IMG/VR virus record: IMGVR_UViG_3300050132_000038
Location: 1 to 64,000 of that record
DNA length: 64,000 bases
Reading direction: 5' to 3' (one strand)
Position 1 is the stretch's first letter. Every line of letters starts with the position of its first letter. Of this stretch, positions 3,438-31,419 are shown piece by piece. Under the pieces are notes generated by a model. It saw nothing but the letters and a program-made list of their open reading frames with translations. It searched no databases and was not told the DNA's origin. Both the position numbers and the translations under genes were made by a program.

Positions 3438-3788
3438 TTACAGTTTTGTGAGATCCTCTTTGTACTTGCGGAGATCCTGCTCAAGCTCAGAAACTTCTAC
3501 TTCATCCGCTTCTGGATCCCGTGTCAGCTGCTTGAGCCGTGTTTGAATCTTCTTGATACGTTGCTGCACTGTAGTCTTGCGATCAGCAGGGGCCTTAGAT
3601 ACCTTCGGCTTTGCTGGGTTTTTTGGTTTAGGTGCTGGTTTTCCGGCGTCCTTAGCAAGCTTCGAGTCGGGATGACGCTTAAGGTACTCTCTTTGCATCT
3701 CCGGATTGAGAGAAGTGAACCAGGATGGGGCTGCGACTACTTCCGTAGTTTCCATCAGCCGCGCTGCTGCGTTAAGTTGAATCTTCAT
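3438..3788 (-). CDS. Hypothetical basic protein with N-terminal LNAAxRL tag and WF..HP.SK.A motif
   Basis: MKIQLNAAARL; WFTSLNPEMQREYLKRHPDSKLA; coiled-coil-like C-terminus. Confidence 0.75.
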   Translation of the reverse strand: MKIQLNAAARLMETTEVVAAPSWFTSLNPEMQREYLKRHPDSKLAKDAGKPAPKPKNPAKPKVSKAPADRKTTVQQRIKKIQTRLKQLTRDPEADEVEVSELEQDLRKYKEDLTKL

Positions 3789-17915: not shown

Positions 17916-20900
17916 CTATACTTCTAGATCCTTATCCTTATCAGAGCCTCGGATGGAAAGCTTCTTCAGCCCCTTCAGCTCCTTGGTAAGATCCATGAGA
18001 GTGGATACCGTTATACCAGCCTCCGTAATCTGTGCGATCTTCGCCTCCAACTGCTGAGGTGAACCAAAGAACGAAAGCGTTGGTGCAGAGGTTTGCCACA
18101 CCACATTGAGTGCTTTCACTTTGATAGCGGCTTTACTAGCCGTCTGACCTTGGATCGGCAAGGCAATGTAAGCTATACCGTCTTCGATAAGCGGATACGG
18201 CTTGAACATCTTCGAATCGTTAGACGGCTTATGCTCCATGCGGTAGAAGTTTTGCAACTTCGCCGAGGTAGTCAACTGATACACGTCCTTATGGCTCTTG
18301 ATCTTCTCAGCCTTAAGTAGGTTATAGAGTTGAGCAAAACCCTCCCTAGCCCCTGACTTCAAGATGGCTGGATCAGGACGGAAACCCTTCTCTTGCCACA
18401 GATCCAACTGACGTTTCAGCCGCAGAGCCTTCGGCATCTTAGCACAGTAGAACAGCGGGTCTGGCCGGAAACCAATAGCCTGCAATGCCTTAGCCACCGA
18501 GTCACCTTCTCCGTTAACGAAGTAGGAAATTCCCAGGAAGCCGTTTACGATAGTAAACTGCAGTTGAGCATTGAGAGATTCTACCAGCTCCTTATGCTTC
18601 TTCAGTTCCTTCTTGATAACGACCTTCTTGTTACGCTCTTGAGCGAGCTTGAGAGCACGACTGCTCTGCTTAAAGATGTTGGCAGGAACATCAATGGGCG
18701 TGTCGATAGGTAGATCCCCAATCTTCTTCAGCAGCTCATTACGAATATCCTTAGTAGAACTCTCGGTACGTGTAATAACGAATACAGAGCTCTTACGAAC
18801 CATAGCAGTAAAGCCAGAGAACAAGTCAACAGGGACACGCTTGCCAGTACCAACGCTGTGCAGAATACCATCACCGAACTCAGTGTGGACTGCCTTACCC
18901 TTCATACTCTGGTACAAGGCTTTCAATCGCAGCTGCTCGGGAGTTTCTTCACCCTCTTCTACCTCGGGTTCATCCTCCTCCTCGTCCCTGCCTGTATCAG
19001 CTTCCTCTGGCTTGCCCAGATACTGATCAAGACGCACTAGACCAGCCTCCTTAGTACCATACAAGTCTAGACCCGGCGGGTAGGGAACCCTAGACATAAG
19101 CTTGGCGTCTGGTGGAGTCTCTGCTACTGTCAGTGGCGTCAACTTAGGATCTTCACCGTTATGAGCTGCCCTATAAGCTACTTTAAATGCCTCATACTCA
19201 TCGTTGCGGACTCCCTTATACTGACCGAATGCCTCGTTGTATTCTGTTAGGTTCTCTTCCCAATCATTCATAGTCTGAATGTTATCCAAACTCATCTTGA
19301 TAATCGGAACGTCAGGAATGCTCTCATACTCAGGGTTATCTGTGTTCTCAAACTTGGCAACAGCAATAACCTTTGAAATCAATCTCGACATCTTGGTAAT
19401 GTCGATCGAACGGTTTGCCAGAATGTAATCATAGAAGATTTCTGCACGGCCTTCAATCTTCTTCAACTCAGGGCGATTGATACGCGAGTCACCCTGTTCC
19501 AGAGTACCGGGGTTCCAGGGATTCTCCCCGCGTAGGAGTCGAGACGCGAACTGGAAGTTAAGGCCTTCGTTCATGGATTGCTCAACACCTACCATCCACT
19601 TTATACGGTCATCCTTCTCGAAACGATCACCGTCCACATCCTTGTTACCCGCCTTGTACAGAATACCCATCTTCTGTAGTTCAGGTCCTGCCAACCGATA
19701 AAGTTCCTCGGCAGATTCCACATAGTTAGTGAACACCAAAACTTTACCTGGGTAGCCCTTGTCTATATGCAGCTTAACTCGGTCTACCATGAGTTGAGCT
19801 TTCGGGCTAACTCGATCAGCACCCTTTAGTACTCGATCGCCTAGTATATCGGAGGCAGGAGCAATCATGAACTGCTCAAGCCGGGCTAGATAGGGCTTCA
19901 GCAGGTTCGCCATATCCTCACCTGCGTCCTCATCCTTTACCTCATCCTCTCCTTCTTCTCCGTCAGTTCCTTCGGCCTCTGGATTCACAAACTTCTGTAG
20001 TGCTTTGTTCTTCTTTGCATCCTCTTTAATACGGTCAATAATACCGTCTAGAATATCATTGTAGACAGAGTACTGAGCGTCCGTTAGGTTGACACCCTTA
20101 ATCCACTCAGTCTTCTTCGGAAGAAGTGCAGCCCACTCTTTACGCATAGCACCCGCTACTACTATACGACTCTTGATCTTCCGCATGATCTCCTGTTGCG
20201 CACCTGGTTTCCAAGCGATAACTCGATTACCCTGAACCTCGGCACCATATCGTAAGTTGAACTCATCTCGAGTACCAAATAACGTTGGATCTATAGTAGC
20301 AATCTGCATTGCCAGATCTGACGGAGAGTCATGAGCCATAGTACCAGAAGCTAGTCGCTTCTTTGGAATGTCAGTAATCAATGACATAGTCGCACGCGTA
20401 CGTGCAGTATCGTTCTTAACCTTGTGCGCCTCGTCGAGAGCTACGTACCCAAATCCAAACTGGCGCAAGAAATCGATAGCCGGGAAGATGGTAGTCGGCG
20501 TAGTACCGTAACACAGAGCACGTTGTCTCCACTTCAACACATCATAGTCAGCAACCACTACTGTGTTACGGGGAGCCTTCTCCAGCATAGCCTTCAATCT
20601 AGGTAACCCATTCTGAACGAATGCATAACTATTGATAGCTATAACATTCAACTTACCCCCAGTGAAGAACACGATCTCCTTCACATAGTTGGCAACTAAG
20701 TGACCTGGACACAAAATCAAATAAGGTTGACTACGGTTAGCTTTGATCTCATACAGTACATCGGTCAAGATGATGACCGATTTGCCACCGCCCGCCTGGA
20801 CTGGTAGGATAGCAAAGTCAGGGCTGTCCTTGAGTAGGTTACGAACCTTGATCTGGTGGGGCAGCATACCTACCACAGGTGACAGCAGGGGAATTGAGGG

Positions 20901-22493
20901 GGGTACCCAGCCCTTGGTTACACCCTGATCTGTAGCCGCTCTACGATTGGTTCTATCCTGTGCTTTGAGTACCTCAAAATCAGAGGAGTACTCAACCACC
21001 AGTATTAACCATGCCAAGTTCTCCATAACGTAGGACACCGAGTAACGAGCGTACACTGCGTCTAAGTTGGAGAGTACCGCACCCTTGATAGTCTTAAAGT
21101 AACGAGCAATAGGGCGGAAAGGACCATATCCAAGACGATCAGAGCTTATGTCCGCAAATGTAACAGGATGGCCTTCATCTTTCTCAAAGCGGCTAGCCCA
21201 GTAGGCGAACCACTGATCTAAGTTGTCTTCGACGCCCGCCTGTGGTAGATTCGCAAAACCCTCTACGTCTGAGGCAAGGACCTTAAAGGATGCAGGATGC
21301 ACGTTAGCAGGAACACCAAGTGCAGCGATACGTGCTATATTCTTGTCCGTGACAATACGTTCTTGTAGGAGCGCCCTTATGTGTGAGACGTCGGCTGCTT
21401 GATACCGAGTAAGGTCTTCTACCTCAAGAAAGCCTGAGGTGTTAGTATAGCTGTACTTGTTATTAACCCAGTCGATCAATACTGGAATGTTAGGCGGCAA
21501 CTTCTGTTTAACTTCTGAGCCAGCCTCCATAGCAGAAGCGCCCTCGTTAATATCTACGAGAGCATAACTGCCATCAGCGCGCGTCCCCGCCTGGGTATAG
21601 CGGTCTTCGTACTGAAGAGTTTGATTCAGTTCCTTAGGAAGATAGACAGGGCGCCCCTTAGGGGTAATAGAAATCCCGTCTTTGTTAATGCGTGCATATT
21701 GCGTATGAGACTTAGGCAGAGTAGCAGCGATCTTAGAGATAGGGAATGCTACAAAGGGGGCCAATCCTTCTGAACCGAAACCCGTCGTTACCCACTGCAA
21801 CAGCATAGGGTAAAGGTCAATATCACGCAACTCAATCCAGTGCGTGGAGGTCAGCTGCTGTGCTTCTTCCTTGGAAATCTTAAAGTCTGCGTAAATAACA
21901 GCCAACCCACCTTTAACCTTAACACGAATTCCTAGAAGACAGGCTTGCAATGCAACCTTAGCCCTAGCGTCTAAACCACTAATGCTCGAAATAACTCGGG
22001 AAGCAGGGATCTCTACGCTCATTGGAATAGTAGGATCACCTTCATCCTTCAAGCGTTGCTGCAACTCCGTCATGTTCTGATGATGCTCAGGAGTTGACTC
22101 AGGAATCTCCTTGGCAAACGCATAGCCCAATAAATTTTGTTCAAGCAACTGACTCAGGGGTCCTTGGCTATTCTTATTGAAAGCGAACAGTGGAACGGAT
22201 ACTCGAAAGTACGGATCAGCACCCATCACCTTCTTGATGGTCAGGTACCCAGCAGGCGTGGTGTCCATTACGAACTTGGTTGCCTTACGAATACCCTGTC
22301 GTACACTACCGAGGCGCTTATCATTGCCAATAGAAGGGAGCAGTGAGCATGCCCACAACTTGGTCATGAACAGGATTTCCGGGCCACTGTATAGTGCGCG
22401 GTAGATGTAGAAGAAGTTGCTCTGTAGCGCCTGCTTATCCAGCTGCAAACTCTCAGGGACAACTAGGTTGGTAGTTGGTCTCAACTCGGCCAT
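17916..22493 (-). CDS. Large SNF2/SWI2-family helicase/ATPase
   Basis: Walker A QAGGGKS, Walker B LDEAH, ASGT, KVLVF, EGLNFQ, WNPG..EQ..SRINR. Confidence 0.88.
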   Translation of the reverse strand: MAELRPTTNLVVPESLQLDKQALQSNFFYIYRALYSGPEILFMTKLWACSLLPSIGNDKRLGSVRQGIRKATKFVMDTTPAGYLTIKKVMGADPYFRVSVPLFAFNKNSQGPLSQLLEQNLLGYAFAKEIPESTPEHHQNMTELQQRLKDEGDPTIPMSVEIPASRVISSISGLDARAKVALQACLLGIRVKVKGGLAVIYADFKISKEEAQQLTSTHWIELRDIDLYPMLLQWVTTGFGSEGLAPFVAFPISKIAATLPKSHTQYARINKDGISITPKGRPVYLPKELNQTLQYEDRYTQAGTRADGSYALVDINEGASAMEAGSEVKQKLPPNIPVLIDWVNNKYSYTNTSGFLEVEDLTRYQAADVSHIRALLQERIVTDKNIARIAALGVPANVHPASFKVLASDVEGFANLPQAGVEDNLDQWFAYWASRFEKDEGHPVTFADISSDRLGYGPFRPIARYFKTIKGAVLSNLDAVYARYSVSYVMENLAWLILVVEYSSDFEVLKAQDRTNRRAATDQGVTKGWVPPSIPLLSPVVGMLPHQIKVRNLLKDSPDFAILPVQAGGGKSVIILTDVLYEIKANRSQPYLILCPGHLVANYVKEIVFFTGGKLNVIAINSYAFVQNGLPRLKAMLEKAPRNTVVVADYDVLKWRQRALCYGTTPTTIFPAIDFLRQFGFGYVALDEAHKVKNDTARTRATMSLITDIPKKRLASGTMAHDSPSDLAMQIATIDPTLFGTRDEFNLRYGAEVQGNRVIAWKPGAQQEIMRKIKSRIVVAGAMRKEWAALLPKKTEWIKGVNLTDAQYSVYNDILDGIIDRIKEDAKKNKALQKFVNPEAEGTDGEEGEDEVKDEDAGEDMANLLKPYLARLEQFMIAPASDILGDRVLKGADRVSPKAQLMVDRVKLHIDKGYPGKVLVFTNYVESAEELYRLAGPELQKMGILYKAGNKDVDGDRFEKDDRIKWMVGVEQSMNEGLNFQFASRLLRGENPWNPGTLEQGDSRINRPELKKIEGRAEIFYDYILANRSIDITKMSRLISKVIAVAKFENTDNPEYESIPDVPIIKMSLDNIQTMNDWEENLTEYNEAFGQYKGVRNDEYEAFKVAYRAAHNGEDPKLTPLTVAETPPDAKLMSRVPYPPGLDLYGTKEAGLVRLDQYLGKPEEADTGRDEEEDEPEVEEGEETPEQLRLKALYQSMKGKAVHTEFGDGILHSVGTGKRVPVDLFSGFTAMVRKSSVFVITRTESSTKDIRNELLKKIGDLPIDTPIDVPANIFKQSSRALKLAQERNKKVVIKKELKKHKELVESLNAQLQFTIVNGFLGISYFVNGEGDSVAKALQAIGFRPDPLFYCAKMPKALRLKRQLDLWQEKGFRPDPAILKSGAREGFAQLYNLLKAEKIKSHKDVYQLTTSAKLQNFYRMEHKPSNDSKMFKPYPLIEDGIAYIALPIQGQTASKAAIKVKALNVVWQTSAPTLSFFGSPQQLEAKIAQITEAGITVSTLMDLTKELKGLKKLSIRGSDKDKDLEV

Positions 22494-23833: not shown

Positions 23834-24304
23834 TTACTTAGCAGTGGCAAGCAAACGAGCTGATGCACCCAACTTCAGAGGAGCTAATCCATCGCTATAC
23901 AGCATCTCCTGACTAGCAATACCCGAACCTGTATCACCGACACTCACTCCGTCGTTCAACGTCGTGTCCTGCAGACGTTGAGTTGATGTATCAGAAGCAG
24001 GAGCTCCGTCATTAAGCAGCAGGTCATCAGTTTGAGTAACGTTAGGATCATAGTCACCGTCCAGTACTTGTTGGGCATCGCTGAGACCTACATCACCTTG
24101 CCCGCCACCGATACTTTCTACGTCTACTTCTGCATCGGCCAGCACTTCTTCTGACTCAGCAAGCATGGAGTAGCTGATTGCTTCGAGCGTAGCATGATCT
24201 ACTCCGCAGGCGCCCGCTAGTGCATGGAATTGATCATCAGATGGATCGGGATTAACTTTAAGAAACAGAGCTATAAGCTCTTGGAGTTGCTGTTCATTTT
24301 CCAT
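23834..24304 (-). CDS. Acidic protein with C-terminal tag variant
   Basis: Ends LKLGASARLLATAK. Confidence 0.6.
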   Translation of the reverse strand: MENEQQLQELIALFLKVNPDPSDDQFHALAGACGVDHATLEAISYSMLAESEEVLADAEVDVESIGGGQGDVGLSDAQQVLDGDYDPNVTQTDDLLLNDGAPASDTSTQRLQDTTLNDGVSVGDTGSGIASQEMLYSDGLAPLKLGASARLLATAK

Positions 24305-24320
24305 TGTGAATCCTTATTTA

Positions 24321-24575
24321 TTACGTTAGGCCAGGGAACGTAATACCAGCAGGCCGTGTCTTCTTTCCCTTGTACTCTACAAGTTCTGGTAAGCGGTACA
24401 TAGATCGCACACCTCCGCCTACGTCTACCATAGCGACTTCTTCTTTACGCGCTACTTTAATATCGAGTACAGTTCCAATATACTCGTCGGGGTTTCGGGC
24501 TTCTGCTACTTTCATTCCAGGCTGTACCTTTGTAGCAGCTAGTAGTCGAGAGGCCGCATTAAGTTGTATCTGCAT
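24321..24575 (-). CDS. Small SH3/KOW-like protein with LNAAxRL tag
   Basis: MQIQLNAASRLLAA, then VQPGMKV..YIGTV. Confidence 0.65.
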   Translation of the reverse strand: MQIQLNAASRLLAATKVQPGMKVAEARNPDEYIGTVLDIKVARKEEVAMVDVGGGVRSMYRLPELVEYKGKKTRPAGITFPGLT

Positions 24576-24892
24576 TATTTACCTCGGGCTCGCATTAGGT
24601 GAGTATGGCGTCGATTATGGCAGTCCTCACAAATGTGTAGGAGGTTACTTATTAGGTTCGCACCACCCTTTGAGAGCGGTACTATGTGGTGGCAGTCCTT
24701 AGCGGGAGCGTTACACCGCACACCATTAATACGCGCCTCGCACTTTCCTCCAGATCGCTTACGGACTGCAGCACTAATTTCCCACCAGCCCGCTTTTACC
24801 GACATACCGCTCTGGGTATTGTACGAGTCTCGCCTAATAGTAGCCACGCCGAACGCGTTTCTCTTAGCTGGTCTTGTCCGACGTGCCCACAT
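24575..24892 (-). CDS. HNH endonuclease
   Basis: C..C, DCHHIVPLSKGG..SNL..ICEDCHNRRH. Confidence 0.88.
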   Translation of the reverse strand: MWARRTRPAKRNAFGVATIRRDSYNTQSGMSVKAGWWEISAAVRKRSGGKCEARINGVRCNAPAKDCHHIVPLSKGGANLISNLLHICEDCHNRRHTHLMRARGK

Positions 24893-26056: not shown

Positions 26057-26455
26057 TTAGTGCGGAGTATCATCACCTCCATCTCGATCTCCGCCGCCGT
26101 CATTATGCTTACCGTTCTCGTCCCGAATGGTTAGGAATCGGTCCAGTGTGTTAGCACCTGCCCATACTGCCATGTAGATGCTGAAGTAGGCTTCGGTTAG
26201 TTTATCGTGCAGCACCAACACGATTAGTCCCCACGAGGAGATTACCAGAGCGGTGAATTGCCCTAGCTGATGGATAGATGGTTGTTTAGTTACCGGGTCA
26301 ACTATCAGTGCCCGAAGGTCGAAGTTGTCTTTCTTGTACTGCGCGTAGATCAGCACGCCTACACCTGCTGCTATAATTACCAGGAGTAAGGTGGCCAGAG
26401 TATTGTTTACCAGCGCGGCTAATAGTTGTTGTAGTGCCGTTGCGAGATCGGCCAT
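26057..26455 (-). CDS. Multi-pass membrane protein, holin-like
   Basis: Three hydrophobic segments, charged C-terminus, strong AGGAGG RBS. Confidence 0.5.
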   Translation of the reverse strand: MADLATALQQLLAALVNNTLATLLLVIIAAGVGVLIYAQYKKDNFDLRALIVDPVTKQPSIHQLGQFTALVISSWGLIVLVLHDKLTEAYFSIYMAVWAGANTLDRFLTIRDENGKHNDGGGDRDGGDDTPH

Positions 26456-26510
26456 GACAGCCTCCTTTCTTTTTGAATCTCAATGGGGCTATATGCTATA
26501 TTTACAATAA

Positions 26511-28037
26511 TCAGAATAGCTGACCGTAGCCTCTGCCGTATCTACCCCACATGGTAACAGGAGAGATCGTAATACCCACTGCACCGATAGCGCCGTGCTG
26601 TAGCATAGTCGGATCGGTGGAGCCATCGCCCCCCATCACCCCACGCATTACCAAGTTCTGCTTCAACGCCTTCAGCTCATTGTCCAACCTCGACTGAATC
26701 TTAGAGATAGCAGCATCGAACCCTGCTGTACGATCAATGTCCAAGGTAATAGCAGCACCCTGGAACTGGAATGCCTTCTCTGCTTCTGCCGTTACCTGCG
26801 ATTCCAGAGCAAACATCTCAGCGTGCATCAACCAGTATTCACGGATGACCCCTAAGGCATTGGTGAAGCTGAAGTTGGTGAATACCCCGTACGCACCGTT
26901 GAAAGCATCCGCACCCCGACGCAACCAAGTCATGATCGTTTGGTTAGGGTACAGCATGTCAGGAGTACCATACAGCGTAGTGTTCGCCTTGTTGATCTTC
27001 GACCGTACATCAGTAATAGCTGTCATCATAGATGCATTGATAACGAACAGGTCTGCTGATTCCTGGTAGACGAGCGAGGCTTGTGACGAATACCAATACT
27101 TCCAGATCACAGTGTAGGGGACAAGGGATACCATCAACTGCTGGGTGTCGATGACCCCTGCGTAGTACCAACCATTAGCAGTACGTTCTGAGTTACCAAT
27201 AAGGGACGGGGCTGCTACCTGTACACCGCCAGCCCACAATTCGACGGTGACGTTATCGTACAGCTGATCTAGTACAATCGATAGGTTAGCAGGGCTGCCT
27301 TGCAGTTCAACTGTAGACTGCGTGCCCAAAGGTACCGTATTCAACCCTACTACACGGATGTTCTCGTAGGAGAAGAAAGCATTCTGCGATACCTGACCTT
27401 GCAGTGGATCATTTTGCAGGTTCTGTACCTGCGGGAGTTCTAACGTATATCGAAGTTGATACCGTTGGTTATCTAAGCTAGGTGGTACTGTAGAGGGCAC
27501 TGTGATAACTGCGTTAGCTAGGACTGTGTTAGCCAAACCGTTCGACTGTACCAAATAGTTGTAGGCGTTACCTGCTGCGTACACTGTGCCGTCTGAGGCT
27601 AAGAGTTCCCAGGTTACAAAGCCTCCACGTGGGTCAATAGTAGCAGGGAAGCTAAAGATAGCAGTACCAATTGCTGCCATGCCTGCTTGGATTTCATCAA
27701 CCAGGTCGGTGAACGCCTGCGGATTCTGTGTGGCGTACGGTACAAATAATTCATCCTGAACTGTGACTGCTACCTGAGCTGTGAGCACCCGAGCATTAGT
27801 AGTAGCCAGAATCTGGAAGCCGTAAGCAGTACCAGCAATACCACCGGATAACAGGATCTGCGTTACAGGATTAGCACCTGACTGCAAGACTGCTGTGAGC
27901 GGTGGAGCAGTAGTCGGTGTTACCGCAGTCAATACTATGCTGGTGATCGTTTCACCTGGAGCAAGCATAGACGTTAGGTTTGGTGCGACTAATGTATTCT
28001 CTGTGGGCTGTGCAAAATAGACGAATGTATTGTTCAT
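26511..28037 (-). CDS. Putative virion head/neck structural protein
   Basis: Beta-rich N-terminal domains plus a helical C-terminal domain reminiscent of head-tail adaptors; in the late block. Confidence 0.5.
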   Translation of the reverse strand: MNNTFVYFAQPTENTLVAPNLTSMLAPGETITSIVLTAVTPTTAPPLTAVLQSGANPVTQILLSGGIAGTAYGFQILATTNARVLTAQVAVTVQDELFVPYATQNPQAFTDLVDEIQAGMAAIGTAIFSFPATIDPRGGFVTWELLASDGTVYAAGNAYNYLVQSNGLANTVLANAVITVPSTVPPSLDNQRYQLRYTLELPQVQNLQNDPLQGQVSQNAFFSYENIRVVGLNTVPLGTQSTVELQGSPANLSIVLDQLYDNVTVELWAGGVQVAAPSLIGNSERTANGWYYAGVIDTQQLMVSLVPYTVIWKYWYSSQASLVYQESADLFVINASMMTAITDVRSKINKANTTLYGTPDMLYPNQTIMTWLRRGADAFNGAYGVFTNFSFTNALGVIREYWLMHAEMFALESQVTAEAEKAFQFQGAAITLDIDRTAGFDAAISKIQSRLDNELKALKQNLVMRGVMGGDGSTDPTMLQHGAIGAVGITISPVTMWGRYGRGYGQLF

Positions 28038-28567
28038 GCTTTCACCTTAAAGTAAAAATTCCCTCTAAGTTTATTTATAGGTTTACCTTTTACAATAGGT
28101 ATTGTATCGGTACCCCAAGAGAAATCCACAGGTACCTGAAGATGATCTAGTAGTTCCACTGAATAGTACTTAGATACGGATCTCCAGGTTCTAACTGCCA
28201 TTATACCTATAATGCTTGAACTTTGAAGTTCACCTAGAACATGAATAGCTGCTAGATATAGTACAAGACCTAAATGTCGTCCCCTGTATTCTTCTTCGAT
28301 AAAAACACTGATAACCATGTTGCCTTTGGCCGTCGTAGACAATATTCCAATTATTCTATCTCTATCTTTTAAGAAAAAGTCACGAGAATAAGTCAACTTC
28401 AGGTAGTATAAGGACAAACCTTCTTTTGTGCCAAGTGGTACAGCAGGCTTAGTTTTCAATCGTTTTTCAAGAAACTCTACGTCTCGATCAAATTCTAGTT
28501 GAGTGTAGTTCTCTCGCATCCTAATAGGCATAGACTCTACGAGCCTAGAGGCTGCATTTAATTGCAT
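28034..28567 (-). CDS. GNAT-family acetyltransferase with LNAAxRL tag
   Basis: MQLNAASRLVES; acetyl-CoA motif VFIEEEYRGRHLG..LY; visibly more AT-rich than its neighbours. Confidence 0.72.
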   Translation of the reverse strand: MQLNAASRLVESMPIRMRENYTQLEFDRDVEFLEKRLKTKPAVPLGTKEGLSLYYLKLTYSRDFFLKDRDRIIGILSTTAKGNMVISVFIEEEYRGRHLGLVLYLAAIHVLGELQSSSIIGIMAVRTWRSVSKYYSVELLDHLQVPVDFSWGTDTIPIVKGKPINKLRGNFYFKVKA

Positions 28568-28659
28568 GTCGTTTCACCTGGAGCAAGCATAGGCGTTAGG
28601 TTCGGAGCTACTAATGTGTTTTCTGTTGGCTGTGCGAAGTAGACAAATGTGTTGTTCAT
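28558..28659 (-). pseudogene. Truncated duplicate of the first 30 codons of 26511..28037
   Basis: Translates MNNTFVYFAQPTENTLVAPNLTPMLAPGETTCN*; 28570..28659 vs 27948..28037 differ at 11 of 90 nt. Confidence 0.88.
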
Positions 28660-29378
28660 TTTTCAATTCCCTTCAGGTACTCTGAAACCTTAAGAGGGGT
28701 ATTAGTCTCTGAGACTACGGCTAGTATGTTGTCTCTGCTAACGTGGGACACACCTGGCCCCTGAACCACTACCTCTTTCTGATCGTGGGAAAATGGATCA
28801 TCCAGGACAGTACGTATGAACTTTTTATCTATATAGAACAGAGCTGACGGTGGCGTATGAATAGCTAATATAATTCCGATCTGTTCTAAAGGTGTATCCC
28901 AGGTGACGTTGGCGTACTTCAATGCAACTTTAGGATCTGAGGTCCAGGATGAAAGAACAGCGGGCTCTACTTTCAACGGCTTGCCGTTTAGGATCTTTGT
29001 CAGCGCGGTCTCAGGGATAAGCAACCCTCGATACACTACCTTCGGTAGTGTACTACGGTAGCTTTCTCTAACGACGTGGAAAGCTTTTAGGGCATCCTGC
29101 ATTTGCGCGGAGGTGAATCTACCAGAACCGCCACTTATCCACTGCTGTATAGTATGTGAAACCCATTCAGGGAGGGGTTCAGCTGCAGCTAACAGCCTGT
29201 GTGCGGCGTTCAGCTTGACGCCTGATACTCCTATAGATGGCTGAACTAACGTGTTGTTAATGCCGTTACCCCAGATGTCAGGATCGCCAATTGATAGTTC
29301 CCCATCTGCTATTGGGGCAGTCTCACCTGTTCTGTGCCTAGGTGCGTGCATTGCTTTTGTCTCTTTCATATTAGCCAT
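28656..29378 (-). CDS. ADP-ribosyltransferase-like protein (R-S-E clade) with internal tag
   Basis: VVYRGL, LSSWTSD and DQKEVVV match the R/STS/QxE arrangement; VKLNAAHRLLAA precedes the domain. Confidence 0.65.
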   Translation of the reverse strand: MANMKETKAMHAPRHRTGETAPIADGELSIGDPDIWGNGINNTLVQPSIGVSGVKLNAAHRLLAAAEPLPEWVSHTIQQWISGGSGRFTSAQMQDALKAFHVVRESYRSTLPKVVYRGLLIPETALTKILNGKPLKVEPAVLSSWTSDPKVALKYANVTWDTPLEQIGIILAIHTPPSALFYIDKKFIRTVLDDPFSHDQKEVVVQGPGVSHVSRDNILAVVSETNTPLKVSEYLKGIEK

Positions 29379-29704
29379 AGTACAGACCTTCCTGGCGCTG
29401 TCGTCAGTAGGCGGATAGTCTGTCCCTTCTGTTTCAATTGAACTGTAGTGCCCGCACAGTACATACCACCGTTGACCTGCCGAGGTTCATCTGAGATCCA
29501 TCGAGCTAACGCCAAGGCCATGACGATACGGGGGCTTTCCTCGTACACTAGCAGGGAATTATTTGCGTCATCTGGTGACTCCGCTTCGATACCATAGTTC
29601 GCTAGTAGTTCAATCAGGTGGGTACTCAACATGGCTTGCTCCTCTATAAGGGACGCTACTAGTCGGTGTGCAGCTTTCATATTAATCTCTCTAGTGTTAG
29701 CCAC
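29366..29704 (-). CDS. Hypothetical protein with tag variant
   Basis: EINMKAAHRLVAS near the N-terminus. Confidence 0.6.
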   Translation of the reverse strand: MANTREINMKAAHRLVASLIEEQAMLSTHLIELLANYGIEAESPDDANNSLLVYEESPRIVMALALARWISDEPRQVNGGMYCAGTTVQLKQKGQTIRLLTTAPGRSVLWLI

Positions 29705-29710
29705 TATGCG

Positions 29711-29980
29711 TTAGCCTCGGTCGGTTATGCGAGCCTTGTTACCCTCTTTGGCTACGTGGCACTTGTGCTCACCTTTACTAAACTCACCGGAGCCTGTTGA
29801 CGTCCACCCATCGCTTTTCAACTTGGAGACTACCTCAGAGAGTGTGGCGTCTACCGTGACATAGTTAGCACCCTCTGGGCGATCGTAGGTGAACTGGAGG
29901 CTGTTGATCCAGCCTTCAAAAGGGTCAGCGTGGACCTCGTACATAGAAAGTAATCGAGAAGCAGCATTGAGTTTAAACAT
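29711..29980 (-). CDS. Small protein with LNAAxRL tag
   Basis: MFKLNAASRLLS. Confidence 0.68.
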   Translation of the reverse strand: MFKLNAASRLLSMYEVHADPFEGWINSLQFTYDRPEGANYVTVDATLSEVVSKLKSDGWTSTGSGEFSKGEHKCHVAKEGNKARITDRG

Positions 29981-30021
29981 AGGGAATCCTTAGTAAGTTT
30001 TCAATGCTGCTAAGTATCATG

Positions 30022-31419
30022 CTAGAGCCACAGCTTCTCTTTACCTGTCGGCTGCTCAGCTTTGGTTTCAGGAGCTTCGGAAGGCTTACTTTCTTCTCCG
30101 ATGCCACTGTTCAGAATCAAAAGAACTTTTCGGAGTTGGGCGTTATTTAATCCAAACTTCTGGCCTAGGAATTCAGCATCGTGCACTGAGACCTCTCTAC
30201 CCTTCGCTACGTTGGTCACTGTGAATTCAATTTGCGTGCTAGAGGGCTTCATTCGAATCTTAGCAGTGCGTGAGCTCTTAAACAACCCCTTTACTTCCTG
30301 GTACAGGGCATACGCAACTTCCTTGGCTTGCTCAGGCTCAACACCTTTACGCAGCTTGAACACTAGCTTATCTTCATCTACATCCAGCTTCTGAATGAAA
30401 TCCTTGTAGCTAAACATCTCTGGCTTCAACTCGTTCAGGGGTTTCCGCAGTTGCGTGGACAACGGCACAGTACCGAGCGAGGAGCTGAAGTCTTCTAGAG
30501 CTAAGAGATCAGAGATAGCTTTAACTGCCTCGCCTGCTGAGCCAACCGATTCACCTCCCTCTTTCAGCAGTTGACCCGGGAGTTCGTACTCTGGGTTAAT
30601 CTGAATCGTAGTAGACTCACCAACAACCCATTGCACTGAGATGTACAGGCTAGGCGTTACCTTACCTTCATCGTTAGTAGCGTTAATCAGCATCAGGTAG
30701 TAGGTGAAAACGATCTGGCCTTCAGCAGAAGTCGATACGTAGAGGAACAGATTGGAGTCCTCAAACATAACGTGCTCTTGCACTTCCTGACGAATAACGT
30801 CGATGTACTTCTCGAAGGTCTTCGGCACATGCTTGGCTGCCACTTCATTTAGGAAGCCTAAGACCGTTTTCAACTGCTTAGCAACCTTACCTTTCAACTC
30901 ATGGAGTGCAGCTATAGTAGCTGTATACGCTTCACCACGACGATCCGGGAACTGCATAGAGAGTTGAGCTTCCACTGCTTCTAGGGTACGATGTTTCTCG
31001 TATAGGTCCTCAGAGAGAGAGTACTGCTCTTCCAGCTTCTTAACGTTAGGGACCACCACCTTAGTAAGTTCTGGATCAATCTTACGCTTGAGTCGTGATT
31101 TATTTGACCCACCTTCACCTTCTTTGATGGTGAGTTCCATCTCAGCAGCCTTAACTAGAGTAGCACCAACCCACTCCTTTGGCTTCTTTAGGAAGGCCAA
31201 CTGAGTTTGGTGTACCTTAATAACCTTCTCGTTCTCGTCGATCTCTTCCTTCATAGTATCTAGGAAGCGAGTGACGTCATCGATGTAACGAAACTTCGGT
31301 AGTTCGATCGCGTGGACACGAGTTCGGGCTACTGTTTTGTTCTTAGCTGTTGCTGACTTCTTCGTGGCAGTAATACCCGAGGAAGCGCGGAGGCGAGCGG
31401 CTGCATTAGTCTTGACCAT
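30022..31419 (-). CDS. Putative virion protein with tag variant
   Basis: MVKTNAAARLRAS; preceded by a CAATTTAAT motif. Confidence 0.65.
   Translation of the reverse strand: MVKTNAAARLRASSGITATKKSATAKNKTVARTRVHAIELPKFRYIDDVTRFLDTMKEEIDENEKVIKVHQTQLAFLKKPKEWVGATLVKAAEMELTIKEGEGGSNKSRLKRKIDPELTKVVVPNVKKLEEQYSLSEDLYEKHRTLEAVEAQLSMQFPDRRGEAYTATIAALHELKGKVAKQLKTVLGFLNEVAAKHVPKTFEKYIDVIRQEVQEHVMFEDSNLFLYVSTSAEGQIVFTYYLMLINATNDEGKVTPSLYISVQWVVGESTTIQINPEYELPGQLLKEGGESVGSAGEAVKAISDLLALEDFSSSLGTVPLSTQLRKPLNELKPEMFSYKDFIQKLDVDEDKLVFKLRKGVEPEQAKEVAYALYQEVKGLFKSSRTAKIRMKPSSTQIEFTVTNVAKGREVSVHDAEFLGQKFGLNNAQLRKVLLILNSGIGEESKPSEAPETKAEQPTGKEKLWL

What the first reader, a model, noticed from the sequence alone, without database searches (positions are those of the whole stretch)
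27948..28659. Insertion scar: a tagged GNAT gene flanked by two diverged copies of a structural gene's 5' end
Seen: the first 90 nt of gene 26511..28037 (27948..28037) are repeated at 28570..28659 as a 33-codon dead-end ORF. The copies differ at 11 positions, 10 of them synonymous. Each copy overlaps the preceding stop as ATGA, and between them lies the AT-rich GNAT gene carrying the LNAAxRL tag. Inference: the GNAT arrived from a related phage together with that phage's allele of the downstream 5' end, leaving the resident 5' end as a relic that preserves translational coupling. This looks like a payload gene caught being swapped in, and the repeat could allow its loss by recombination.
Basis: partly seen in the sequence, partly recalled or inferred. 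Interest (0 to 1): 0.65.

Follow-up and report, generated by a model that had tools for sequence, protein, structure and literature searches.

The report
Recombination scar between two phage cargo genes
In a peat-soil jumbo phage, two related genomes carrying different tagged enzymes at the same swap-prone spot were joined out of register. The phage now carries both enzymes, with a 33-codon leftover of the neighbouring structural gene between them; this is a real but fairly ordinary trace of how phages shuffle genes.

Summary
The first 90-91 nt of the 508-aa head-tail connector gene (27947..28037, minus strand) recur at 28569..28659 as a 33-codon ORF. The copies match at 79/90 positions, and 10 of the 11 differences are synonymous. 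Both copies overlap the preceding stop as ATGA. A low-GC (0.375 against 0.483), tag-bearing GNAT-fold gene lies between them.

It is not an assembly chimera: three separate run assemblies give the same contig.

None of about 60 relatives has the relic. The nearest ones have neither the GNAT nor the upstream ART-like domain. They carry only a short "N-ext + tag" gene in front of the connector.

In other relatives this pre-connector gene carries ART-like, GNAT or SprT-like domains fused right after the tag. Two sibling pairs, with and without the ART-like domain, have clean breakpoints at the tag and at the connector start. The site is therefore a cargo-swap hot spot.

The window's relic marks one mis-registered join: connector nt ~90 of one allele was joined to the start of the other allele's tagged GNAT.

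The relic's AGGTGA sits 6 nt before the GNAT ATG. Coupled translation is therefore plausible but untested.

The parts
26511..28037 (-). 508-aa head-tail connector/adaptor gene. Its first 30 codons (27948..28037) are copy A of the repeat.
   Evidence: PHROG 17327 'head-tail connector' E 7e-83. Pfam Gp77 N-terminal domain E 1e-8. 52-59% aa identity to the annotated connector of phiRSL1, BcepSaruman, Motura and BCSR5.
27947..28037 (-). Copy A of the 91-nt repeat: the 5' end of the working connector gene.
28034..28567 (-). 177-aa GNAT-fold gene. It has an N-terminal tag (MQLNAASRL, nt 28541..28561), a low GC of 0.375, and a stop that overlaps the connector ATG as ATGA.
   Evidence: Pfam GNAT is only sub-threshold (E 0.0065). 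A profile of 35 homologues hits GNAT acetyltransferases in the PDB almost without exception (best hit annotated an N-acetyl-glucosaminidase, 4zm6, 7e-6). The AF2 model has pLDDT 93.5, with the tag residues 1-13 at low confidence. Foldseek top hits are all GNATs at prob 1.0, with TM 0.35-0.44. The ESM Atlas model gives TM 0.71-0.73 to two clusters annotated as (putative) N-acetyltransferases, one phage and one bacterial.
28574..28579 (-). AGGTGA (connector codons 27-29 inside the relic), lying 6 nt upstream of the GNAT ATG. It is the likely ribosome-binding site for the GNAT.
   Evidence: The extended AGGTGAAA occurs only 4 times on this strand of the genome. Two are 28579 (before the GNAT ATG) and 28047 (before the connector ATG). 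Copy A, identical here, supplies a third, near 27957.
28558..28659 (-). Relic: a 33-codon dead-end ORF. Codons 1-30 (28570..28659) are copy B of the connector 5' end, followed by T-C-N-stop. Its ATG overlaps the upstream stop as ATGA, and its stop overlaps the GNAT start region.
   Evidence: Logan's gene caller also called it (33 aa).
28567..28570 (-). The only non-native joint: the last repeat base (28569) is followed by C and then the GNAT ATG (sequence GAAACGA|C|ATG).
   Evidence: alignment. The other two gene junctions have native counterparts in relatives: ART-like|connector in L065 and L070, and GNAT|connector in L038.
28656..29378 (-). 240-aa pre-connector gene, made of three parts. The N-ext (residues 1-54) is shared with the relatives' 65-75-aa genes. 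An internal tag, KLNAAHRL, starts at residue 55 (nt 29193..29216). An ADP-ribosyltransferase-like domain follows, with YRG at 116-118, SSWT at 143 and QKE at 200.
   Evidence: Alignment with the short genes of L010-L012 and L066. ESM Atlas structural match TM 0.63 to a Vis/ADPrib_exo_Tox cluster. 55% identity to the ART part of L070. The motifs were read by eye.

Best explanation
The structure is a scar of out-of-register (illegitimate, probably microhomology-assisted) recombination between two closely related jumbo-phage genomes. The two genomes carried different 'cargo' enzymes at the same hot spot, the gene just upstream of the head-tail connector gene.

In this phage group (phiRSL1 / Sarumanvirus-like) the pre-connector gene encodes a conserved N-terminal piece (N-ext) ending in the LNAAxRL tag. 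Enzyme domains (ART-like, GNAT, SprT-like peptidase, unknowns) are found fused directly after that tag.

Normal exchange uses the tag/N-ext on one side and the connector 5' end on the other as homologous anchors, and it leaves clean junctions. Here one join went wrong. Nucleotide ~90 of the connector of an ART-carrying allele was joined just in front of the start codon of a tagged GNAT of a second allele, and that GNAT was followed by its own connector gene.

The product carries both enzymes in tandem. The stranded 30 codons of connector became a short upstream ORF. Its internal AGGTGA, and its stop codon overlapping the GNAT start, now probably drive GNAT translation.

Shown: the repeat, its purifying-selection signature, its uniqueness, its reality in DNA, the hot spot, and the clean-junction counterparts.

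Inferred: the two-parent event, the microhomology, the translational coupling, and that the tag directs proteins into the capsid.

Undecided: whether the GNAT side, the ART side or neither is 'resident'.
For: (1) Repeat and selection signature: 79/90 identical, 10 synonymous and 1 non-synonymous difference, pS 0.47 against pN 0.015, P = 5e-6. The divergence therefore arose while both copies were parts of working genes, that is, in two lineages before the join. The single amino-acid change (S23P) is on the relic and is derived relative to the relatives examined, which have S or A there. This fits a young relic.

(2) Real DNA: three run assemblies each give one 54.5-kb contig across 26300-30100 with 0 differences at 30-115x word depth. 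The longest exact run shared by the copies is 23 nt, below k = 31. A further JGI contig from a sibling sample (L069) covers the ART-like gene and 49 nt of copy B with 2 SNPs.

(3) Unique and derived: no second connector 5' copy in about 60 related loci. The nearest relatives (L066; L010-L014, 83-86% aa) have only a 71-75-aa N-ext + tag gene before the connector.

(4) Hot spot with clean exchanges:
- L065 against L067, and L070 against L061, are 93-94% identical in the flanks. Each pair differs by an ART-like insert of about 530-620 nt, with breakpoints just after the tag and at the connector start.
- GNAT relatives occur as N-ext-tag-GNAT fusions directly upstream of the connector (L038) and in other N-ext fusions (P0125, P0127, P0140, P0141).
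- L064 has two cargo genes in tandem with no relic.
- L055 carries a SprT-like domain at the same site.

(5) Both non-relic junctions in the window (ART-like|connector and GNAT|connector, each ATGA-coupled) have native counterparts in relatives, so only one joint is illegitimate.

(6) AGGTGAAA is rare (4 per strand) yet sits both at the relic's end and in front of the connector ATG. This fits a join at an SD-like microhomology.
Against: - No parental-type genome was found: neither ART-like gene plus a full connector of copy-B type, nor a GNAT without the relic. The two-parent event is therefore inferred, not observed.
- Microhomology cannot be verified without the parents.
- The 90-nt sample is too small to place either copy on a tree. 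Identity to L066 is 76/90 for copy A and 68/90 for copy B, both within the gene-wide scatter of 64-80 per 90 nt.
- The three runs holding the contig may all be source samples, so they are independent of the assembler but not of the population.
- A relic kept intact by selection (a functional leader peptide) would also give mostly synonymous change.
Confidence: 0.72

Rival explanations
1. One reading: the ART-carrying genome was the resident. A fragment 'tagged GNAT + donor connector 5' end' entered by homology-facilitated illegitimate recombination, with a homologous crossover inside the connector and an illegitimate join at resident connector nt ~90. Copy B is then the resident relic. This is a sub-variant of the main explanation, and its confidence is the share I give to this direction.
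For: The GNAT is 11 GC points below the genome, with GC3 0.30. It has only one relative above 60% identity in 5.8 billion proteins, so it looks newly arrived. The N-ext of the 240-aa gene is about 80% nt identical to the nearest relative L066, like the rest of the backbone.
Against: - At the 11 differing sites L066 shares copy A's base at 9 and copy B's at 1, so copy B looks like the outsider.
- L066's 74-aa gene ends LNAASRLVEALDIKNRDRS. This resembles the GNAT's LNAASRLVESMPIRMRE (33/50 nt) and hints that a GNAT once sat at this site in this clade.
- GNAT homologues are mostly below their own locus GC (4 of 5 checked), so low GC need not mean recent arrival here.
Confidence: 0.3
2. The reverse direction: the GNAT plus the copy-A connector were resident. 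The ART-like cargo, with or without its N-ext, came in from a relative together with 90 nt of that relative's connector (copy B). It was joined illegitimately just in front of the GNAT start.
For: Copy A is closer to L066 and L011 than copy B at the differing sites (9:1 and 7:3). The L066 tail resembles the GNAT N-terminus. ART-like cassettes demonstrably come and go at this exact site in two other lineages.
Against: The sample is small, and against the majority base of four outgroups the 7:2 split is not significant (p = 0.18). The GNAT's strongly deviant composition is unexplained. A resident stand-alone tagged GNAT upstream of the connector has not been seen without another cargo gene in front of it (the only case is L064).
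Confidence: 0.3
3. Assembly artefact: two co-occurring strains were merged by the metagenome assembler.
For: The genome is a metagenome-assembled viral contig. A related low-abundance strain exists in another peat sample (X4).
Against: - The JGI contig and three separately assembled Logan contigs are identical over 3.8 kb.
- The copies share no exact run longer than 23 nt.
- A graph jump between alleles would continue into the connector, not into the GNAT start, so the joint must exist in the reads.
Confidence: 0.03
4. In-situ duplication within one lineage: the connector 5' end was duplicated when the GNAT was inserted, and the relic has since been kept by selection as a functional leader ORF or micro-protein. 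This would explain the synonymous-only divergence without a second parent.
For: The relic keeps its start codon, its reading frame and 29 of 30 residues. It supplies the SD and a terminate-reinitiate arrangement for the GNAT.
Against: pS of 0.47 would need a long history, yet no relative shares the arrangement. Coupling needs only the last ~15 nt, not a conserved 30-residue peptide. Most differences look derived on copy B alone, which is unexpected for two copies ageing side by side.
Confidence: 0.07

Closest known systems
Phage mosaicism by illegitimate or homology-facilitated illegitimate recombination. This is the Hendrix-Hatfull model of non-homologous joins filtered by selection, and HFIR as described for bacteria. 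Named from my own knowledge; the one paper surfaced (PMC3410848) was not read.
   Same: There is a novel joint between unrelated sequences, next to a homologous anchor. A partial duplicate of the anchor gene is left behind. The joint lies at a place that leaves all genes working.
   Different: The parents are inferred rather than known. The event happened inside a dedicated, recurrent exchange site bounded by a conserved peptide-tag coding sequence and a structural gene. It did not happen at a random gene boundary.
Morons (lambdoid-phage extra genes with their own promoter and terminator).
   Same: An extra, compositionally deviant accessory gene sits between two conserved genes.
   Different: No promoter or terminator was found above chance. 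The gene is translationally chained (ATGA overlaps) into a late structural operon and carries the phage's own tag.
T4 Alt and the T4 internal proteins, with their capsid targeting sequence. Also the propeptide-bearing ejection proteins of SPN3US/phiKZ-like giant phages (PMC5694885, PMC7411985, PMC10052503, abstracts only).
   Same: A short shared N-terminal peptide sits on many otherwise unrelated proteins encoded in or near the head module. These include an ADP-ribosyltransferase-like enzyme, in a phage that has a head maturation protease.
   Different: The tag sequence (M-x-x-LNAAxRL) is unrelated to the T4 CTS. It can be internal or C-terminal in the pre-connector gene. Neither cleavage, packaging nor injection has been shown for any member.
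Mobile cassette shuffling in T4-type hyperplastic regions, where short conserved boundary sequences are used as recombination anchors. Recalled from my own knowledge, not tested here.
   Same: Short conserved sequences at cassette borders allow accessory genes to be swapped between related phages.
   Different: Here one border is a protein-coding tag and the other is the 5' end of an essential structural gene. They are not promoter stem-loops.

Membership tests
GNAT acetyltransferase superfamily (the 177-aa gene) | GNAT fold (mixed beta-sheet with the beta4-alpha3 acetyl-CoA site) | tested here: met
   AF2 model with a 35-sequence alignment: pLDDT 93.5. All top Foldseek PDB hits are GNATs at prob 1.0, but TM is only 0.35-0.44. 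The ESM Atlas model gives TM 0.71-0.73 to two clusters annotated as (putative) N-acetyltransferases, one phage and one bacterial.
GNAT acetyltransferase superfamily (the 177-aa gene) | Sequence-profile membership (Pfam gathering score) | tested here: not met
   PF00583 scores 17.2 bits against a cut-off of 20.7. A family profile nevertheless hits GNAT chains in the PDB almost without exception, down to E 7e-6. The protein is therefore a divergent member of the superfamily, not of a curated family.
GNAT acetyltransferase superfamily (the 177-aa gene) | Motif A, R/Q-x-x-G-x-G/A | tested here: inconclusive
   The window has R95-G-R-H-L-G100 and the family consensus is YRGxGLG. The fourth position is G in many homologues but H here, and N, S, D or K in others.
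R-S-E ADP-ribosyltransferases (domain of the 240-aa gene) | ART fold and the R / S-x-S(T) / (Q/E)-x-E triad | tested here: inconclusive
   ESM Atlas structural match TM 0.63 to a Vis/ADPrib_exo_Tox cluster; the Atlas model itself has pLDDT 0.67. YRG, SSWT and QKE were read by eye and are conserved in L070. There is no Pfam or PDB sequence hit.
Moron | Own promoter and terminator flanking the inserted gene | tested here: not met
   5 promoter-like and 2 terminator-like sites in 5.6 kb, at or below the shuffle expectation. None brackets the GNAT.
Homology-facilitated illegitimate recombination product | Homologous anchor on one side | tested here: met
   The two connector 5' ends are 88% identical.
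Homology-facilitated illegitimate recombination product | Short microhomology at the illegitimate joint in the parental sequences | not testable with these tools
   The parents were not recovered. The only indirect hint is the rare AGGTGAAA at the relic's end and before the connector ATG.
Capsid-targeted / injected phage effectors (T4 Alt-like) | Shared N-terminal targeting peptide on head-module proteins | tested here: met
   About 20 ORFs carry the tag, all on the minus strand, mostly 2-7 residues after the start Met. They cluster around the head module. The control on reversed translations gave 0.
Capsid-targeted / injected phage effectors (T4 Alt-like) | Cleavage by the prohead protease, presence in virions, ejection into the host | not testable with these tools
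   This needs virion proteomics on a cultured relative.

The most novel reading that the evidence does not exclude
phiRSL1-like jumbo phages may run a 'plug-and-play' effector platform. The LNAAxRL tag marks proteins for loading into the capsid. The gene in front of the connector is then a dedicated docking site, where enzyme domains (ART-like, GNAT, SprT-like peptidase and others) are exchanged between phages, with the tag-coding DNA and the connector 5' end acting as recombination anchors. The window's relic would be the first mis-registered exchange caught at this site. It would show how a phage goes from one to two delivered effectors.
Probability: 0.4. Interest if true: 0.7.

Novelty: new member of a known kind. 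Interest (0 to 1): 0.5.

Why it matters
Phage genomes are mosaics, but the joins that create new gene orders are rarely seen before selection tidies them. Here the join is still visible. It lies at a site where close relatives demonstrably gain and lose enzyme domains, and it doubled the phage's load of host-modifying enzymes: an ADP-ribosyltransferase-like protein and an acetyltransferase.

It gives a concrete, testable picture of how accessory "cargo" genes spread among jumbo phages. It also points to a shared peptide tag that may be usable to load chosen proteins into phage capsids.

The scar on its own is an expected kind of event. The hot spot and the tag are the more interesting parts.

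Tried and rejected
- Megablast of the region against GenBank phages: no match.
- Single-sequence AF2 model of the GNAT: pLDDT 44, unusable. It was replaced by an alignment-based model.
- PDB sequence searches with the single GNAT and ART-like proteins: nothing.
- My idea that the GNAT's C-terminal KVKA is a remnant of the short gene's tail (as in L011...KVKNE). I rejected it because all GNAT homologues end F-x-F-x-x-x-K, so the tail is the GNAT's own.
- The idea that the L007 267-aa cargo is the same GNAT: no similarity.
- Frameshift fusion of the relic to the GNAT: a TGA lies 3 codons before the GNAT ATG in its frame and there is no slippery site (read).
- DGR-type mutagenesis: the differences are not adenine-specific.
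- Tandem duplication of connector-GNAT followed by deletions, prompted by L061 and L063, where the GNAT lies downstream of the connector. This needs several precise events and does not explain the 12% synonymous divergence.
- RNA structure around the joint: z = +1.15, none.
- Mosaic breakpoint inside the connector against L066: no step in identity.
- P0002 and P0139, the closest GNAT fragments: no contig on record.
- Searches for the joint and for a parent or deletion-type sequence in IMG/VR: 0 hits. The window's own record is excluded by the tool.
- Literature searches for the tag, or for a described equivalent: nothing specific.
Full report
WHAT THE WINDOW IS

The window is the first 64 kb of a 218,861-bp IMG/VR viral genome with direct terminal repeats, rated complete. 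It was assembled from a peat metagenome.

The 508-aa gene at 26511..28037 matches the PHROG 'head-tail connector' family (E 7e-83). It is 52-59% identical to the annotated connector of the jumbo phages BcepSaruman/BcepSauron, phiRSL1, Motura and BCSR5.

The same part of the genome encodes the major head protein, a head maturation protease and the tail sheath. All genes discussed here are on the minus strand.

- The connector's first 90 nt (27948..28037) recur at 28570..28659 with 79 identities. One more base matches, so the repeat is 91 nt.
- Homology ends sharply after GAAACGA and does not extend upstream of the two ATGs.
- Ten of the eleven differences are synonymous third-position changes. 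The eleventh makes Ser23 into Pro in the relic.
- pS is 0.47 against pN 0.015. At least ten of eleven synonymous changes would arise by chance with P = 5e-6.
- The upstream copy opens a 33-codon ORF that leaves the connector frame after codon 30 and stops at TAA 28558..28560.
- The stop of the upstream 240-aa gene overlaps the relic ATG as ATGA. The stop of the 177-aa gene overlaps the connector ATG in the same way.
- The 177-aa gene has GC 0.375 (GC3 0.30). The connector has 0.50 and the genome 0.483. The gene starts MQLNAASRL.

IT IS NOT AN ASSEMBLY ARTEFACT

Three public peat runs, assembled independently of the JGI contig, each yield one 54.5-kb contig. Each covers 26300-30100 with no difference and no alternative joint, at word depths of 30-115.

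The two copies share no exact stretch longer than 23 nt, so they cannot confuse a k = 31 graph. A strain-merging jump would in any case run on into the connector, not into the start of the 177-aa gene.

The runs may be the source samples. They therefore test the assembly, not the spread of the phage.

A 991-bp contig from a sibling JGI sample carries the 240-aa gene and the first 49 nt of the relic with two SNPs.

Contigs cannot reveal rare variants, so the predicted 622-bp deletion product remains untested.

WHAT THE TWO FLANKED GENES ARE

The 177-aa protein:
- It is below Pfam's GNAT threshold.
- A profile of 35 homologues, found by an exhaustive HMMER search, hits GNAT acetyltransferases in the PDB almost without exception.
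- An alignment-based AlphaFold model has pLDDT 93.5, with only the first 13 residues (the tag) poorly defined.
- Its Foldseek hits are all GNATs at probability 1.0, though with low TM-scores of 0.35-0.44.
- The ESM Atlas model aligns at TM 0.71-0.73 to two clusters annotated as (putative) N-acetyltransferases, one phage and one bacterial.
- I therefore call it a divergent GNAT-fold protein.

The 240-aa protein upstream is composite:
- Residues 1-54 align with short (65-75 aa) genes that precede the connector in the closest relatives.
- The tag (KLNAAHRL) follows at residues 55-62.
- After the tag comes a domain whose Atlas model resembles arginine ADP-ribosyltransferases (TM 0.63 to a Vis/ADPrib_exo_Tox cluster). 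It shows YRG, SSWT and QKE motifs, read by eye.

THE WIDER FRAME: A CARGO HOT SPOT

Relatives were retrieved by protein search, IMG/VR scans and a JGI metagenome scan.

- The nearest ones have only a short gene in front of the connector, consisting of N-ext plus tag. These are L066, at 69-84% nt identity per gene, and L010-L014, at 83-85% aa in the connector. None has an ART-like domain, a GNAT or a relic.
- In other relatives the same gene is longer, with a domain fused straight after the tag:
  - an ART-like domain in L065 and L070;
  - a member of this very GNAT family in L038, and in the proteins P0125, P0127, P0140 and P0141;
  - a SprT-like peptidase in L055;
  - unknown domains elsewhere.
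- Two natural pairs show the exchange directly. L065 and L067 come from one metagenome. L070 and L061 come from runs with neighbouring SRA accessions. Each pair is 93-94% identical in the flanks and differs by an ART-like insert of about 530-620 nt. The left breakpoint lies just after the tag and the right breakpoint at the connector start.
- Stand-alone tagged GNATs also occur immediately downstream of the connector (L061, L063). One occurs as a second cargo gene behind a fused one, with no relic between them (L064).
- A native ART-like|connector junction and a native GNAT|connector junction therefore both exist in relatives. The only joint in the window without a counterpart is relic|GNAT, at 28567-28570.
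- None of about 60 related loci has a second copy of its connector 5' end.

MOST LIKELY HISTORY

The synonymous-only divergence means that both copies were, for most of their separate history, the 5' ends of working connector genes. Two alleles from related phages therefore met.

The simplest event is one mis-registered join. Connector nt ~90 of an allele carrying N-ext-tag-ART was joined just before the ATG of a tagged GNAT, and that GNAT was followed by its own connector. There are two possible routes:
- a single unequal crossover between co-infecting genomes;
- a fragment integrated with one homologous and one illegitimate end.

The single amino-acid change lies on the relic and is derived relative to the relatives examined. 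If it is the only post-event change, the relic is young compared with the 12% divergence of the alleles. This is an inference.

A possible aid to the join is the octamer AGGTGAAA. It occurs four times on this strand of the genome. Two are at the relic's end and four bases before the connector ATG, and copy A, identical to the relic here, supplies a third. Without the parents the microhomology cannot be checked.

DIRECTION IS NOT RESOLVED

- the GNAT has a deviant composition;
- it has very few close relatives.

Against it:
- the nearest relative, L066, shares copy A's base at nine of the eleven differing sites and copy B's at one;
- L066's short gene ends LNAASRLVEALDIKNRDRS, which is reminiscent of the GNAT's first residues;
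- GNAT homologues tend to be below their locus GC anyway.

Identity of either copy to L066 lies within the scatter seen along the gene. I give the two directions about equal weight, and the remainder to a single crossover with no 'resident'.

CONSEQUENCES FOR EXPRESSION (INFERRED)

The relic has the connector's own start context, so it is probably translated. AGGTGA at 28574..28579 lies six bases before the GNAT ATG, and the relic's stop lies four bases after that ATG. This arrangement is suited to direct initiation and to termination-reinitiation.

No promoter or terminator stands out, and there is no notable RNA structure. The GNAT is therefore chained into the structural operon rather than being a self-contained moron.

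Recombination between the repeats would remove the GNAT and leave an intact connector, which at most would carry Pro instead of Ser at residue 23.

THE TAG

About twenty ORFs of the genome begin M-x(1-6)-LNAAxRL. All are on the minus strand and cluster around the head module. A control on reversed translations gave zero.

By analogy with the T4 capsid targeting sequence, and with the propeptides of ejection proteins in giant phages (my own knowledge; abstracts of PMC5694885, PMC7411985 and PMC10052503), I think the tag most likely directs proteins into the prohead. I could not test this.

I found no description of this tag in the searchable literature. The search was limited.

VERDICT

The scar is real. 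It is unique among known relatives and is best read as a recent out-of-register recombination between two cargo alleles.

As a kind of event it is known, so I rate it a new member of a known kind with moderate interest. The tag-bounded cargo hot spot that it exposes is the more novel lead.

Noticed in passing
whole genome G000; in the window at 3776, 4855, 5549, 6968, 17011, 24563, 28561, 29213, 29971, 31410, 33734, 34367, 35786, 36839, 37774, 38793 (minus strand): About 20 ORFs start with M-x(1-6)-[LI]-N-A-A-x-R-L. All are on the minus strand and cluster around the head module (major head protein, maturation protease). A control on reversed translations gave 0. Relatives carry variants of the tag (Motura: IQAAxRL). 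It is probably a capsid-targeting or processing signal, and I found no description of it.
   Followed up: partly
window 28656..29378 (-): The gene upstream of the relic is a fusion. It joins a conserved N-terminal piece (found as a 65-75-aa stand-alone gene in the nearest relatives), an internal tag, and an ADP-ribosyltransferase-like domain with YRG / SSWT / QKE motifs.
   Followed up: partly
L065 1-960 vs L067 2200-2560; L070 133-1237 vs L061 1955-2600: Two natural sibling pairs, 93-94% identical in the flanks, with and without an ART-like cargo domain. The breakpoints lie just after the tag and at the connector start, which gives direct evidence for cassette exchange at this site.
   Followed up: yes
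L064 164-1200: A 1.2-kb JGI contig carries an N-ext-tag-GNAT fusion followed 2 nt later by a second, stand-alone tagged GNAT (59% identical to the window's). This is a tandem cargo arrangement without any relic.
   Followed up: partly
L066 762-986: The nearest relative's 74-aa pre-connector gene ends LNAASRLVEALDIKNRDRS*. This resembles the first 17 residues of the GNAT family (LNAASRLVESMPIRMRE) and may be the stump of a deleted GNAT.
   Followed up: partly
L061 4001-4627; L063 4001-4606: In two relatives a stand-alone tagged GNAT of the same family sits immediately downstream of the connector, with an ATGA overlap, rather than upstream. The cargo family can occupy both sides of the connector gene.
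   Followed up: no
L055 3964-4941: Here the pre-connector gene carries a SprT-like metallopeptidase domain (Pfam E 3e-9) after a tag-like VSSGRRL. This is another cargo type at the same site.
   Followed up: no
window 23834..24304 (-): A 156-aa acidic protein ends with a tag-like ...GASARLLATAK at its C-terminus. The short pre-connector genes also carry the tag near their C-terminus, so the motif is not strictly N-terminal.
   Followed up: no
window 24575..24892 (-): An HNH endonuclease gene (105 aa) lies about 1.6 kb downstream of the connector. HNH genes sit at a similar position in BcepSaruman, phiRSL1, L010 and L063. A role in marker co-conversion near the hot spot was not examined.
   Followed up: no
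L011 7013-10005: The relative's large SNF2-type helicase (2042 aa) carries intein/Hint domain hits. The window's homologue (17916..22493, 1525 aa) is shorter, but it was scanned only against PHROGs, not against Pfam intein models.
   Followed up: no
run X4, fragments on window 26300-26494 and 28815-29151: A fourth peat metagenome holds low-depth fragments 93-99% identical to the ART-like gene and to the region downstream of the connector. Nothing from it was laid on the GNAT or the connector. It may be a parental-type strain, but coverage was too thin to say.
   Followed up: partly
G000 210646-210842 and 119638-119698: Short (49-61 nt) repeats, 88-98% identical, at three places far from the window. 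Their nature is unknown.
   Followed up: no
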